Source: Trichoplax adhaerens (taxonomy: Eukaryota; Animalia; Placozoa). Taken from it: a stretch of DNA of 64,000 nt. The stretch covers positions 1,798,001-1,862,000 of the forward strand of contig NW_002060954.1 of NCBI RefSeq assembly GCF_000150275.1, in the 5' to 3' direction. The position numbers and the translations under genes are program-made. Shown here in pieces: positions 18,281-23,143 of the stretch. Positions within the stretch are counted from its first letter, which is position 1. Every line of letters begins with the position of its first letter. Under the pieces are notes generated by a model. It was not told the DNA's origin. It ran no database searches and worked only from the letters and a program-made list of their open reading frames with translations.

Positions 18281-18521
18281 CAACACGAGTGATGATGTCA
18301 CCAACTGGAATCATGATCACCGGTAGGATATCATTCCGGTACAGCTAGTTCTACGTAAAACGAAAGGCAAAATAACATGAAGAGGATTTTGCAGATCTGT
18401 GATGCCGACTGTATTATAATATACAGTATAATAATCATGTATATTGTACAGTATAGTACTAGGTAAGGATACAAGAATATCATAAACCAAATCTCCGCAA
18501 ACAATCGTCAAAACTATTTCT

Positions 18522-18716
18522 AGTACAGTAAAAGAGTAAAATCCTCAAGCTTTAAGCTTTACGGTGATGTCACCGATTACAAGGACGACACATCATGTTT
18601 GCGTCATCATATTTGTCAAGCAGCTTGTGTGACACAAGTATGATCCCATTCCGGCCCATGCACACTTGTACAGTATGGCAAAAGAGTAAAACTCTCAAGT
18701 TTGAGTTTTGCAGTGA
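18522..18716. repeat. Imperfect ~45-bp direct repeat pair
   Basis: gtacagta-aaagagtaaaatcctcaagctttaagctttacggtga (about 18523) versus gtacagtatggcaaaagagtaaaactctcaagtttgagttttgcagtga (about 18668). Confidence 0.7.
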
Positions 18717-19173
18717 AGGCAGGGGGAAATGAATGATTTATTAATGTATACCTTGATATCTTGATGATTTGCCATTTTGAGTTTGTGCAACGTTTTGAAG
18801 GATAAGATTAATAACCGTTATGCATGTACTGTAAATGCTCGCACACAGATTAGTGCGCAATAGAATAGTATTGACAGTAAATGACTTAAAATGAACTAGT
18901 TAAACATTTGAGTTCCGTCACTGGATCATGTTGAAGCTGAGAAGAGAGCTCGAAATAGTAAAGTATTGTTTTTCATTAGCTTTTGAGCACAACTGCGGCA
19001 TCACCTTAATGATCATATTCTGAGTATCCATGTTATCCAAGCATAGCAATATAGGGTTCTTAGTACGCAAGCTAACAAGAAAGTCTCAAACAGAGCTTCG
19101 CAATAGACATCGCGAACTCTATTACTTTTTAATCCATTCAATGTCGGCACTAGCTGAACGGTAATTAATGAAT

Positions 19174-19507
19174 TGATGAATCAGTCGTCTCTGAGGATTG
19201 AGTCTGATGCTTAAATTAACTTGACGCTGATATTACTATAAGAATAAAAAACCACAACACCCAATATACTTTTAAATCTGATGACGTTAGCCCAAAGGCT
19301 AGCGATGATCTCAGAAATACAAGCCAGTCCTGATATAATTGAGGGAATAACTAGCGATTCTCTGATGAAGAAACTCCAGCATGATTATGACTGATTCACC
19401 GATGATATAATTGAATTAATCAATTAATTTAAATGATTCTCAGCGGATAGTCTCTAATTTAAAGCGTGACACTACTCAATTTTCAACTCTTGACTGCTAA
19501 ATTCTGA
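19174..19507 (+). ncRNA. Candidate cluster of compact box C/D snoRNA-like units
   Basis: TGATGA at 19174, 19279 and 19363, paired with downstream CTGA/ATGA at 19227, 19330 and 19402 (another CTGA at 19504). One D-adjacent segment, ACAAGCCAGT, is antisense to the conserved LSU rRNA sequence ACUGGCUUGU. Decayed coding DNA is an alternative explanation. Confidence 0.3.
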
Positions 19508-19847
19508 TATATGGATTCAAATTAGTCCTACGTTTCAAGTCTGCATACTGTTTTTTTCAGCTTTGATTTTTTCTGAGTCGGTATGACGGTAGATAACTTG
19601 CGAAATATTAAATTTGAAAACCCTTTTTTTAATCTACAGTAAAATATATCAATTTCGAAAAGATAATGATTCATCGGTACATACAATCACAGTATACCTG
19701 TAAGTACGCGCAACGTATAAACTGATGAAAATTGTTTTATTCAAGCATACTGATCAGGCTAGAGTTTTACAGTTACGTTTTGATTTAATTGAGTTCATTC
19801 GAAATTTTAATTGATTTCAAACGCTGGATTATACATATGAACAGGAG

Positions 19848-20806
19848 CTACAACTTATCTTCCTCATGGATTACTGGAAGAAAATGTTTTCTTCTAGTAG
19901 TCCATGTCTTCCCCTACGAGGATCAAGTATAAGGTAACGATAATACGAGTAAGTAAGTATATGCAAATATCGAATCTACTGCATAAAGGTCCACAATAAG
20001 TAATATCGTTGTTACAAAGATAAAAAAACGAGAAATTTATTAATTGGTTACAATCTTGAAAGCGAATACATGTTTAATGGACAATCTCTATTTACGTCTA
20101 ATTTAAGACTAAACTGTTTCATGAAGTAATCGAAAAATATATATTCACACTTGTGAAGTCGACATTCGAGCAGGCATGATCTGATAAAATTTGCCCAGAT
20201 CAGGACGGGTTGAGTATTCATAGGCCTAATCATTCCCAGCTTAAAATGGCTTACAATCATAATGCTTTCTATTTTTTGCCTAATACCCACCAATGGCGTC
20301 GTCGAGAAAGTGGTCGATAATTTTTGTTTTCTCTAGATGAAGATGCTCCCCATAAAATCTGAAAATACGGATGAAATTGAAACCGGTAAAACATTGATAT
20401 GCAGTATAAGATATACCTATTAATAACTGTATGATCATACAATCGTTCAAAATTCTATATGTCGCTGGCTCACCTTATTGATGAATCTATGAATGCTCTG
20501 ATCATGTGTAGCCTTCGGATTAGACTCATCAGCAACGATATAATCACGATCATTATTTATATCCTCCGAATCGATGGACGCTTTAAGATTAATTCCGTCG
20601 TTGATTTGTTGATCTAATATATCTTCATCGCTATCTTTACGTTGTGTTTCCGATTCGTTGTCGTCACCGGCTTCGTTTACTTCTAATGCTCTATCGGCGT
20701 CTTCGTCATTTTCGTGATCACGATAATTAGGGTAAACAGGATCGCTACAGGATAGCGCAATCAAAGCGATCACACTCAGGACGACAACTGCATTTATTGT
20801 AACCAT
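19848..20806 (-). CDS. Secreted prepropeptide (signal peptide, acidic pro-region, basic/Gly-Lys cleavage sites), about 181 aa
   Basis: Exons 20806-20474, 20358-20287, 20225-20151 and 19913-19848, all joined by phase-0 GT-AG introns. Signal peptide MVTINAVVVLSVIALIALSCS. Probable 5'UTR intron 20970-20813; AATAAA on the minus strand at 19741-19736. Exons 3 and 4 are less certain than exons 1 and 2. Confidence 0.75.
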
Positions 20807-23143
20807 CTTATCCTTTAAGAGGCAACAAGAATCACTACATGATTATACAATATTTCATGCTATAGCTACATTTATAAATATCTAGTTTCTACTTATAGTA
20901 AATATTTATTTATATAAATGGTTAAACTAATAATCGAAATCAAAAAGCTTCGTTTAATACGGAAGATTACCTCTTTCTTGCTTTAACTTTTATCGTTCGA
21001 AATCGTAGTAATACGTATATAGAATAGCGAAGCCGAGACTACAACCGGCATTTATATCTTTTTAGGCCATATTTCATGAATATTACCTAGTATGAACCTT
21101 TCCCTAAAATTTCTAAAGAAAATGGCTTACAACGTGTTTGCCATTGTATTTAGTTTCGAAACCTCGTAAATTCTTCGAAAATAATCTATTCATGTAGAAT
21201 TATGTATTTAAATAAGTAAACAAGTTCATATTTACTATTTAAATTATAGAAAATTAATGAGATATCATTAATTCTGGCTTCCGATTATTAATCTATCACC
21301 GAAAATGAACAACCACATTTTTCTATGTTATTTTATTCTGAAAAGTGGCGTCTATTATAATTATGAATAAATTAATAGCTGATCATTCACTGGACTAAGT
21401 ACATTCGGTACTTTATTCTTTTGATGCATTCTATAGAAGAAATTTAAGTTCACTATAAATGTAAACTTGACTTGGCGCCATTAATAGCGATACATAGAAT
21501 GTAATTATACGTGTATGTAAACTAAAAGTGCTTTCGCTCGAAATGCATTTACAGTGTGTCATCTTAAAATTGCATGGTCTGTTTGCATGCCCTACTGCTG
21601 ATTATGTAAATATACAAATTTATCGCTGTTTAATAATTATAGTGGCATGGAAATTGCTCTATGGCTCACTATCGATAATAATTTCGATAAATATATTCAC
21701 TTGCTACTCGGACTATTGTGTTGATAAGAACGAAATGATGCATTAGCCTACAATATGCATGTCCCATGAATACTATGTTCTACATGCATATTTGACACTG
21801 ATCAAAATATGAGATTAAAATCTCTTCCTTTTTAGAATACTATACGTACTATATAATTATCAAGAAATTATTGATGTCAACGGTTATACTGGTACAATAC
21901 CTACACTATGCATGAAATATTAATGTTATCATAAACTTTTCTTGATTTCAGGCACAAGAAGGAAATAAGCCTATTTGATAAGATTATTCTTTGTTCCTTC
22001 ACTGAAATCATCTATACTTATCGACGGTTCCTATTTTTACGTATAAATTAATGCCCAATAAATACTATCGTATAGTAATAAGGCGTTTGCATACTCCCCT
22101 GTGGTTATTAATACAATTAATAATAGCATCGATGAATCTATCACGTAACAATAAATCTTTCGCTGGCCTAATTATAATTGCATTATAATTATCGTAGTTA
22201 TAAAAACATAGAAAGGTTGCTTTCGAAATCGTGTCAGGCTTAACAGGTAGCTTCTTGCTAATTCATTTATTGTCTAACATAACATAAGTATAGCACGGTC
22301 ACAATTGATTTAATATGAAGTTCTGATCACGCTAATCTTTACTCATTTCAGTAATTCGTATTTACTCATGAAATCGTATCTGTCGCAACCTGCAGCAGCA
22401 TCAAACTACAATGCTTGTATCCTGAATACCTTATCAAGCTGAATTTTTATAGGCCAATTTCTATAGCTGGAATATTATAAACCTGATACAGTAAGCAAGT
22501 TATTCGAATCTCATGTGCTATTGCTAAATAGCAGAATTATCGTAATTTATGTCCTCTATCCTTTCCGTATAGACAAAGGGCCTACTGTTGAGTATCGCAT
22601 TGTAGTTATTGTCTTTCGTACTAAAAATAGTAAGAATAATATATAGAGCTTTCCCATTTGACTACATTCTTCTGAAAATCAAAATACTCACAGGTAGTTA
22701 ACAATGAAATATTTTTACATGAGGCATAATCTATCCAATTTAGTCTTCAGGTGAATTTAAGAATAGTTTGTAAAAGTGACGATTACTATTACCGCCATAC
22801 CGGAATAATTTCAAAATTTTATCGAAATCAACTGAACGCAGGAGAACTTCTATAAAGATATCGCATTCATGCACATAGTTTTTATCCGCTGTAAAGCTAA
22901 TAGTGTTTCTTCTGATGGATTGCAATATTTATTCAGAGTTTATTGAAGACTGCTTGTATCAATTTTCGATTTATGTATTGTCTATTTCAGGGAAGTAGTA
23001 CATTAGTAAAATGATAATACTGTATATCTACGAAATTTAATAAAAATGAATTACTAATGTTAAATAATTACAGTTTTTAGTCCAGTAAAATGTAAGCTAA
23101 AAGTCATCGATTATTATAATTGGTACAATCTGATAATATTATC

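What the first reader, a model, noticed from the sequence alone, without database searches (positions are those of the whole stretch)
19848..20806. Unannotated peptide precursor with predicted amidated products and an intron-retention switch
Seen: a signal peptide, a ~75-aa Asp/Glu-rich spacer ending ...ADESNPKA, then IHRFINK|ILWGASSSRENKNYRPLS-RRR-HWW|AYEYSTRPDL-GK-FYQIMPARMSTSQ|-GK-TWTT-RRK-HFLPVIHEEDKL*, using three phase-0 introns. Known: prohormone convertases cut at basic residues, and PAM amidates peptides ending in Gly. Inference: the products would be HWWAYEYSTRPDL-amide, FYQIMPARMSTSQ-amide, HFLPVIHEEDKL and a cationic amphipathic peptide (antimicrobial-precursor-like layout). Retaining the 61-nt intron 20286-20226 gives RRR-HWWVL-GKK*, a clean HWWVL-amide, so splicing could switch the peptide output. 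The sequences do not match the repetitive placozoan peptide families I recall. This could be a new signalling or defence peptide system.
Basis: partly seen in the sequence, partly recalled or inferred. Interest (0 to 1): 0.85.

Follow-up and report, generated by a model that had tools for sequence, protein, structure and literature searches.

The report
Annotated Trichoplax secreted peptide precursor, over-spliced
This is a real, expressed and already annotated Trichoplax gene for a small secreted protein ending in ...RRR-HWWVL-GKK.

Summary
The four open pieces and their GT..AG borders are in the sequence as described. Transcript contigs from three studies splice out only the first coding intron (20473-20359). 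They then run unbroken from 20358 to about 19718.

The mRNA therefore encodes a 140-aa protein ending ...RRRHWWVLGKK*. It is already annotated as TRIADDRAFT_64229 / XP_002115961.1 ("expressed protein"), and as RDD40062.1 in Trichoplax sp. H2.

- They carry natural 1-nt deletions, one of them also in the H2 assembly, that break the proposed frame.
- Frame-extending GT..AG pairs here are no more frequent than in shuffled sequence.

The real product has three parts:
- a signal peptide;
- an 81-aa acidic propiece (net -19);
- a 35-aa cationic, Trp/Arg-rich C-terminus (net +7) that starts at a D|Q site, contains RRR and ends in the amidation signal GKK.

This layout matches the "arminin-like" putative antimicrobial precursors described in Trichoplax in 2025. 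It also fits a published neuropeptide signature (RR-x5-GK).

The protein has no homologue outside Trichoplax H1/H2, no Pfam domain and no paralogue. Processing and function are untested. It is a modestly interesting new member of a known kind.

The parts
21051..21056 (-). TATAAA box, 26-31 nt upstream of the 5' end of the longest transcript contig
   Evidence: Sequence. X10 contig starts at 21025. Its role as a promoter element is inferred.
20971..21025 (-). Exon 0, non-coding 5'UTR with no ATG
   Evidence: X10 record 5 joins 20971|20812 and skips 158 nt with GT..AG ends. Identical in the H2 assembly.
20813..20970 (-). 5'UTR intron (158 nt, GT..AG)
   Evidence: Joint in X10. Donor GAG|GTAATC, acceptor ...CTCTTAAAG|G.
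20474..20812 (-). Exon 1: 6 nt of 5'UTR plus codons 1-111. ATG at 20806 in the context GATAAGATGG, the first AUG of the transcript.
   Evidence: 100% match to P0001 residues 1-111.
20744..20806 (-). Signal peptide, residues 1 to about 21 (MVTINAVVVLSVIALIALSCS)
   Evidence: Hydrophobic core 6-16 with mean Kyte-Doolittle 3.3, and small residues at -3/-1 for cleavage after 19, 20 or 21. Helix 2-19 in the AF2 model. No SignalP tool was available.
20501..20743 (-). Acidic propiece, residues 22-102 (about 26 D/E against 7 K/R, net about -19)
   Evidence: Disordered in the AF2 model. Both H1/H2 amino-acid differences (L74H, A92V) lie here.
20359..20473 (-). Intron 1 (115 nt, phase 0, AAG|GTGAGC ... 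TATTTTCAG|A). The only coding-region intron removed in transcripts.
   Evidence: Joint 20358/20474 in X4, X5 and X10, three different studies.
20474..20500 (-). Start of the cationic C-terminal peptide region, Q103-K111 (QSIHRFINK), directly after D102. A D|Q site of the kind used for N-terminal processing and pyroGlu in placozoan and cnidarian precursors.
   Evidence: Sequence. Highest hydrophobic moment of the protein at 103-113, uH 0.84. Helix 102-114 in the AF2 model, pLDDT about 60. D/E-Q processing rule from PMC9545775. Cleavage here is inferred.
20269..20358 (-). Coding part of exon 2: I112...S129, RRR130-132 (20304-20296), HWWVL133-137 (20295-20281), GKK138-140 (20280-20272), stop TAG (20271-20269)
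   Evidence: No difference between H1 and H2.
19718..20268 (-). 3'UTR (about 551 nt).
   Evidence: Unbroken in X5 record 12 (19762-20358), X10 record 5 (19788-20358) and X4 records 6-9. Contig breaks occur only at the allelic bubble 20106-20216. Indels at about 20186-20189, at 19948 in X10 / 19956-19959 in H2 (probably one event) and at 19887.
19736..19741 (-). AATAAA polyadenylation signal, 18 nt before the end of the X4 contig at 19718
   Evidence: Sequence. Contig end. Its use is inferred.

Best explanation
The locus is the single-copy Trichoplax gene TRIADDRAFT_64229. It has three exons: one non-coding exon and two coding exons split by one phase-0 intron. Its mRNA encodes a 140-aa prepropeptide, and everything downstream of the TAG at 20271-20269 is 3'UTR. 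Shown: the gene structure, its transcription, the protein sequence and its restriction to Trichoplax H1/H2. Inferred: the signal peptide (about 1-21) sends the protein into the secretory pathway. The acidic propiece (22-102) neutralises the cationic tail and is removed, most likely at D102|Q103, so that Q103 can cyclise to pyroGlu. Carboxypeptidase removes K139-K140, and peptidylglycine alpha-amidating monooxygenase turns G138 into a C-terminal amide on L137. The result would be a 35-aa cationic (+7), Trp/Arg-rich peptide ending in HWWVL-amide with an amphipathic helix at its N-terminus. I think this is most likely a secreted defence peptide of the arminin-like kind. If prohormone convertase also cuts after RRR132, the products are a 27-aa N-terminal peptide (Q103-S129) and the pentapeptide HWWVL-amide.
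For: Gene structure:
- Intron 1 is removed and the contigs run unbroken from 20358 to 19762/19718 in X4, X5 and X10, three studies. X10 also shows the 5'UTR intron.
- The 140-aa protein is the only database protein matching exon 1 within the 61-194 aa range, so no 180-aa model exists. It is annotated in H1 and H2.
- The CDS has no indels in any run or in H2, while the 3'UTR has three.

Layout:
- Hydrophobic N-terminus, net -19 propiece, +6/+7 tail, single RRR, terminal GKK.
- Predicted helices only at 2-19 and 102-114.

Precedent:
- Trichoplax arminin-like putative AMP precursors have a signal peptide, an acidic N-terminal region, a basic C-terminal region, D/E cleavage motifs and a C-terminal Gly for amidation (PMC12013895).
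- Hydra arminin 1a-C also ends ...GKK (PMC6217004).
- D/E-Q N-terminal processing occurs in Placozoa (PMC9545775).
Against: - No peptide from this gene appears in the held part of the mass-spectrometry table of Najle et al. 2023. The TrispH2_007607 id and 'WWVL' are both absent.
- The gene is not named among AMP1-4 in PMC12013895.
- The expressing cell type is unknown.
- No orthologue is detectable outside Trichoplax H1/H2, so conservation of the cleavage and amidation sites cannot be tested.
- The tail's net charge (+7 over 35 aa) and hydrophobicity are lower than arminin 1a-C (+13 over 31 aa).
- The signal peptide was not scored with a dedicated predictor.
- The AF2 model has low confidence (mean pLDDT 57).
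Confidence: 0.6

Rival explanations
1. The same gene model, but the product is a signalling peptide. Convertase cleavage after RRR132 plus amidation releases HWWVL-amide, a single-copy neuropeptide-like messenger made by a peptidergic cell type.
For: RR-HWWVL-GK fits the signature used by Najle et al. 2023: 3-10 residues between a K/R pair and a G-K/R pair. Feature-based look-alikes in the ESM Atlas include several vertebrate and insect prohormones (DH2-like, UTS2B, osteocrin, 26RFa, NPFF), but all score 0.85 or less, which is only a lead.
Against: Known placozoan preprohormones are mostly multi-copy, and their peptides' N-termini are flanked by acidic rather than basic residues. No peptide was detected in the held part of Table S5. 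There is no conservation outside Trichoplax.
Confidence: 0.25
2. The reader's four-exon model exists as a regulated minor isoform, so splicing switches the peptide output.
For: GT..AG borders in phase 0 are present. Contigs drop rare variants, so absence is not proven. Real micro-exon peptide genes are reported elsewhere in this genome (unchecked notes).
Against: No joint at 20286/20226 or 20150/19914 appears in four runs, and the contigs do not branch at those sites. The acceptor of 'intron 2' is purine-rich, with 33% pyrimidines in its last 15 nt against 73-80% for the two used introns. Frame-shifting 1-nt deletion alleles lie in 'exon 3' (also in H2) and 'exon 4'. The frame extension is at chance level. 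No database protein carries the extension.
Confidence: 0.05
3. The gene is a young orphan whose secreted product is not processed, or has no specific function.
For: Restricted to Trichoplax H1/H2, with no domain and no paralogue. The only two amino-acid differences between H1 and H2 are non-synonymous, against one synonymous change. The protein is predicted to be disordered.
Against: It is transcribed in every RNA-type run examined, and both alleles appear in the transcript contigs of X4. The open frame and the complete C-terminal motif are identical in H1 and H2. The tripartite layout with a terminal GKK is unlikely to be accidental, although this was not quantified.
Confidence: 0.15

Closest known systems
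Trichoplax 'arminin-like' putative antimicrobial peptide precursors AMP1-4 (Ta 55945, 56030, 60631, 64402; Mayorova et al. 2025, PMC12013895)
   Same: Same species. Signal peptide, highly acidic N-terminal region, basic C-terminal region with aliphatic residues, a D/E cleavage motif, and a C-terminal Gly signal for amidation. Lineage-restricted: AMP1 and AMP4 also lack orthologues in Hoilungia and Cladtertia.
   Different: Ta 64229 is not named in that paper's text. It is 140 aa, slightly below the stated 150-250 aa. I could not fetch the AMP1-4 sequences to test similarity. The cell type is unknown, and the internal RRR allows a pentapeptide product.
Hydra arminin 1a (Augustin et al. 2009; arminin 1a-C sequence in PMC6217004)
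   Same: Tripartite precursor with a cationic C-terminal peptide containing Trp and Arg and ending ...GKK.
   Different: No sequence homology was detected. Arminin 1a-C has +13 over 31 aa, against +7 over 35 aa here. The phylum is different. Arminin's activity is measured, whereas nothing is measured here.
Placozoan preprohormones (SIFGamide, FFNPamide, PRWamide and others; Nikitin 2015, Varoqueaux 2018, Hauser 2022)
   Same: Secreted precursor, a D|Q site before a candidate peptide, and a Gly plus basic amidation signal.
   Different: Those precursors carry many tandem copies of short peptides, while this one has a single C-terminal candidate. There is no sequence similarity to any listed peptide.
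Trichoplaxin-1 and trichoplaxin-2 (Simunic 2014; PMC7436000)
   Same: Trichoplax peptides predicted from cDNA with the layout signal peptide, acidic propiece, C-terminal cationic amidated peptide.
   Different: The sequence is different. Trichoplaxin-2 follows a run of 13 Arg and reads HHWRRYARIGFRAVRTVIGK-amide.

Membership tests
Arminin-like putative AMP precursors of Trichoplax (definition in PMC12013895) | N-terminal signal peptide | tested here: met
   Hydrophobic core 6-16 and -3/-1 small residues at 19-21. Helix 2-19. No dedicated predictor was run.
Arminin-like putative AMP precursors of Trichoplax (definition in PMC12013895) | Highly acidic N-terminal region followed by an alkaline C-terminal region with aliphatic residues | tested here: met
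   Residues 21-101 have net -19. Residues 103-137 have 8 K/R against 1 D/E and contain I, L and V.
Arminin-like putative AMP precursors of Trichoplax (definition in PMC12013895) | Length about 150-250 aa | tested here: not met
   140 aa. This is marginally below a loosely stated range.
Arminin-like putative AMP precursors of Trichoplax (definition in PMC12013895) | C-terminal Gly as amidation signal and D/E cleavage motif | tested here: met
   The protein ends ...VL-G-K-K-stop, and D102|Q103 lies at the acid/base boundary.
Arminin-like putative AMP precursors of Trichoplax (definition in PMC12013895) | High expression in lower-epithelial (peripheral ventral) or gland cells | not testable with these tools
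   The cell atlas cannot be reached. The gene id is absent from the held supplementary tables.
Arminin-like putative AMP precursors of Trichoplax (definition in PMC12013895) | Sequence relatedness to AMP1-4 or to Hydra arminins | tested here: not met
   phmmer against 1.84 billion representatives finds only the protein itself. There is no paralogue in the genome. The class is defined by layout, not homology.
Neuropeptide-like propeptide (signature of Najle et al. 2023) | Signal peptide, no transmembrane domain, and 3-10 residues between a K/R pair and a G-K/R pair | tested here: met
   RR-HWWVL-GK at 131-139. The only hydrophobic stretch is the N-terminal one.
Neuropeptide-like propeptide (signature of Najle et al. 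2023) | Peptide detected by mass spectrometry, or expression in peptidergic cell types | tested here: inconclusive
   The gene id and 'WWVL' do not occur in the held, truncated text of Table S5. Cell-type data were not available.
   Only the joints 20358|20474 and 20812|20971 were seen in four runs. Rare isoforms are not excluded.

The most novel reading that the evidence does not exclude
TRIADDRAFT_64229 yields a previously undescribed, genus-restricted amidated peptide. It would be either HWWVL-amide acting as a single-copy signalling peptide, or a 35-aa pyroGlu...HWWVL-amide Trp/Arg-rich defence peptide. This would add a member to the small set of placozoan bioactive peptides that repeat-based prediction scripts miss.
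Probability: 0.4. Interest if true: 0.5.

Novelty: new member of a known kind. Interest (0 to 1): 0.3.

Why it matters
Placozoans coordinate behaviour and defend their feeding epithelium with secreted peptides and have no neurons, so each additional precursor helps to complete that catalogue. This gene has sat in the databases since 2008 as an 'expressed protein' with no function. I found no paper that mentions it in main text, nor in the supplementary files of the two placozoan papers I searched.

Its layout makes a concrete, cheap prediction: an amidated ...HWWVL C-terminus that mass spectrometry and synthetic-peptide assays can test. The value of this follow-up is mostly corrective. It removes three predicted peptides and a 'splicing switch' that are not supported, and it shows that in this AT-rich genome in-frame GT..AG continuations past a stop codon arise by chance.

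Tried and rejected
- **Four-exon model.** Rejected on transcript contigs, indel alleles and a shuffle control.
- **Alternative donor at 20290.** No joint was seen there.
- **Homologues.** Exon 1 by reference found only the H1/H2 cluster. Full-length phmmer against 1.84 billion representatives found only the protein itself. The six-frame search of the own genome found no paralogue. Pfam gave nothing. I could not confirm that the Hoilungia and Cladtertia proteomes are in those libraries, so 'absent from other placozoan genera' is not shown.
- **ESM Atlas.** Scores were 0.85 or less and the structure matches were meaningless. These are leads only.
- **AF2 single-sequence model.** Mean pLDDT was 57, too low for a fold search, so none was run.
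- **Literature.** No paper's main text holds the gene ids or 'HWWVL'/'WWVL'. Neither do the held supplements of Najle 2023, and the held supplement of Mayorova 2025 lacks the gene ids and 'WWVL'. Sebe-Pedros 2018 and Augustin 2009 are not held.
- **Trichoplaxin-2.** It is a different sequence.
- **Synteny route to a Hoilungia orthologue.** I gave this up. The neighbouring genes, a UDP-glycosyltransferase and a HERC-like gene, are made of small exons, and the protein search cannot reach their long products from single exons.
- **Joined sequences.** Exons were translated and searched by reference, and the real two-exon product was used through its database id P0001. The only joining was inside script 46, to count open frames and to read the H2 frame.

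Full report
**What is in the sequence.** On the minus strand an ATG at 20806 opens a 111-codon exon ending ...HRFINK at 20474, followed by GTGAGC.
- 20358-20287
- 20225-20151
- 19913-19848

Reading on from 20287 without splicing gives V-L-G-K-K and a TAG at 20271-20269. The letters are as described.

**What the transcripts show.** I laid four public runs on 18300-22300.
- X1 covers everything, including intergenic DNA, at uniform depth. It behaves as genomic DNA.
- X4, X5 and X10 come from three different studies, and X10 is an RNA library on record. They cover only about 19718-20814 (X10 up to 21025).
- All three contain the joint 20358|20474, so intron 1 is removed.
- From 20358 the contigs run unbroken to 19762 (X5), 19788 (X10) and, in pieces, 19718 (X4).
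The contigs do not branch at those sites.
- The only contig breaks, in X1 and X4, are at 20135/20106 and 20216/20187. They coincide exactly with an allelic bubble of five substitutions and one 1-nt deletion.
- X10 adds a 5'UTR intron (20970-20813, GT..AG) and a non-coding exon 0 (21025-20971). A TATAAA box lies 26-31 nt upstream of it. An AATAAA at 19741-19736 lies 18 nt before the end of the X4 contig.

The mRNA seen is therefore exon 0 / 20812-20474 / 20358 to about 19718. Its first AUG, in a good context, opens a 140-codon frame ending ...RRRHWWVLGKK*. Contigs cannot exclude rare isoforms, and I had no raw reads.

**The protein is annotated.** Searching exon 1 by reference returns a single cluster:
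- P0001, 140 aa: XP_002115961.1 / EDV21813.1 / TRIADDRAFT_64229 / UniProt B3S6T3, "expressed protein", Trichoplax adhaerens.
- P0002, 140 aa: RDD40062.1, TrispH2_007607, Trichoplax sp. H2.

Both end in HWWVLGKK. The H2 gene call spans 538 nt, which is 333 + 115 + 90.

I aligned the window with the H2 locus.
- The 423-nt CDS has three substitutions: one synonymous (V8) and two non-synonymous (L74H, A92V). It has no indels.
- The 3'UTR has a 1-nt deletion inside 'exon 3' (about 20186-20189) and a 4-nt deletion in 'intron 3'.
- The same 1-nt deletion is one of the two alleles in X1 and X4, and is the form assembled in X5 and X10. It is therefore a haplotype carried by the sequenced animals themselves.
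- A second 1-nt deletion at 19887 lies in 'exon 4' in X4 and X10.

Two further points argue against the extension:
- The acceptor of 'intron 2' has 33% pyrimidines in the 15 nt before the AG. The two introns actually used have 73% and 80%.
- From donors in the last 60 nt of the ORF, 10 GT..AG pairs extend the frame by at least 20 codons. Shuffled 3'UTRs give 7.6 +/- 3.6, 99.8% of them have at least one such pair, and 25% reach the observed number. The extension is what chance provides.

**What the real product looks like**.
- Residues 1 to about 21 form a typical signal sequence, with the hydrophobic core AVVVLSVIALI and small residues at -3/-1 for cleavage after 19-21.
- Residues 22-102 are strongly acidic (about 26 D/E against 7 K/R, net about -19) and are predicted to be disordered.
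- At D102|Q103 the character flips. Q103-L137 has 8 K/R against 1 D/E, three Trp and two His.
- The highest helical hydrophobic moment of the protein is at 103-113 (uH 0.84). A low-confidence AF2 helix covers 102-114.
- The tail contains the protein's only tribasic site (RRR130-132), then HWWVL, then G-K-K-stop.

There is no Pfam domain, no paralogue in the genome and no homologue among 1.84 billion representative proteins.

**How it most likely works.** The steps below are inferred from established prohormone biochemistry and from placozoan precedents:
1. Co-translational removal of the signal peptide.
2. Removal of the acidic propiece. In placozoan and cnidarian precursors the N-termini of peptides are typically preceded by D/E and begin with Q, which becomes pyroGlu (PMC9545775). 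D102-Q103 fits this.
3. Trimming of K139-K140 by carboxypeptidase.
4. Amidation of L137 from G138.

The product would be a 35-aa peptide, pyroGlu-SIHRF...RRRHWWVL-amide. If a convertase also cuts after RRR, the products would be a 27-aa peptide (Q103-S129) plus HWWVL-amide.

**Comparison with what is known.**
- Mayorova et al. 2025 (PMC12013895) describe five Trichoplax genes as resembling Hydra arminins, four of them named AMP1-4. Their criteria are a signal peptide, an acidic N-terminal region, an alkaline C-terminal region, D/E motifs and a C-terminal Gly for amidation.
- Ta 64229 meets every layout criterion except the loosely stated length (140 aa against 150-250 aa). It is not named in that paper's text.
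- Hydra arminin 1a-C itself ends ...GKK (PMC6217004).
- RR-HWWVL-GK also satisfies the neuropeptide signature of Najle et al. 2023. However, neither the gene id nor the peptide occurs in the held part of their mass-spectrometry table.

I therefore favour a defence-type cationic peptide over a signalling pentapeptide, but only moderately. The cell type and the processed products are unknown.

**Novelty and verdict.**
- The gene is known to the databases but has no function assigned. I found no paper that mentions it in main text, nor in the two papers' supplements I searched.
- What remains is a new, uncharacterised member of a known kind of tripartite secreted peptide precursor, restricted to Trichoplax as far as these libraries show.

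Noticed in passing
window 20106-20216: Two haplotypes (five substitutions plus a 1-nt deletion within about 50 nt of the 3'UTR) are present at roughly equal depth in the DNA-like run X1 (68 vs 57). Both also appear in the RNA-type run X4 (151 vs 121). The animals are heterozygous here, and both forms appear in X4's transcript contigs.
   Followed up: partly
In X4 the contig depth falls along the UTR (409, 272, 110). This could reflect alternative polyadenylation, but contig depth cannot show it.
   Followed up: no
window 18300-19640 (includes 18930-19580, another first-stage note about a possible snoRNA cluster): None of the three RNA-type runs (X4, X5, X10) has a contig here. Only the DNA-like run X1 covers it. 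Small RNAs would be missed by such libraries, so this is weak evidence.
   Followed up: no
window 21179-21337 and 21401-21613: Two short low-depth (3.5-4) contigs in X4 lie upstream of the gene's promoter, with no convincing ORF nearby. They may be background or an unannotated low-level transcript.
   Followed up: no
run X10: A metatranscriptome labelled with a different organism (organism B) contains the fully spliced Trichoplax transcript. It carries one of the two H2-type amino-acid variants (A92V) plus two indels in the 3'UTR, so a placozoan was present in that sample.
   Followed up: no
L003 (Trichoplax sp. H2, NOWV01000113.1) and window about 17648 and about 23700: The gene sits alone in an interval of about 6 kb between a UDP-glycosyltransferase gene and a HERC-like (RCC1+HECT) gene. 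All three are in the same orientation, and the arrangement is the same in H1 and H2.
   Followed up: partly
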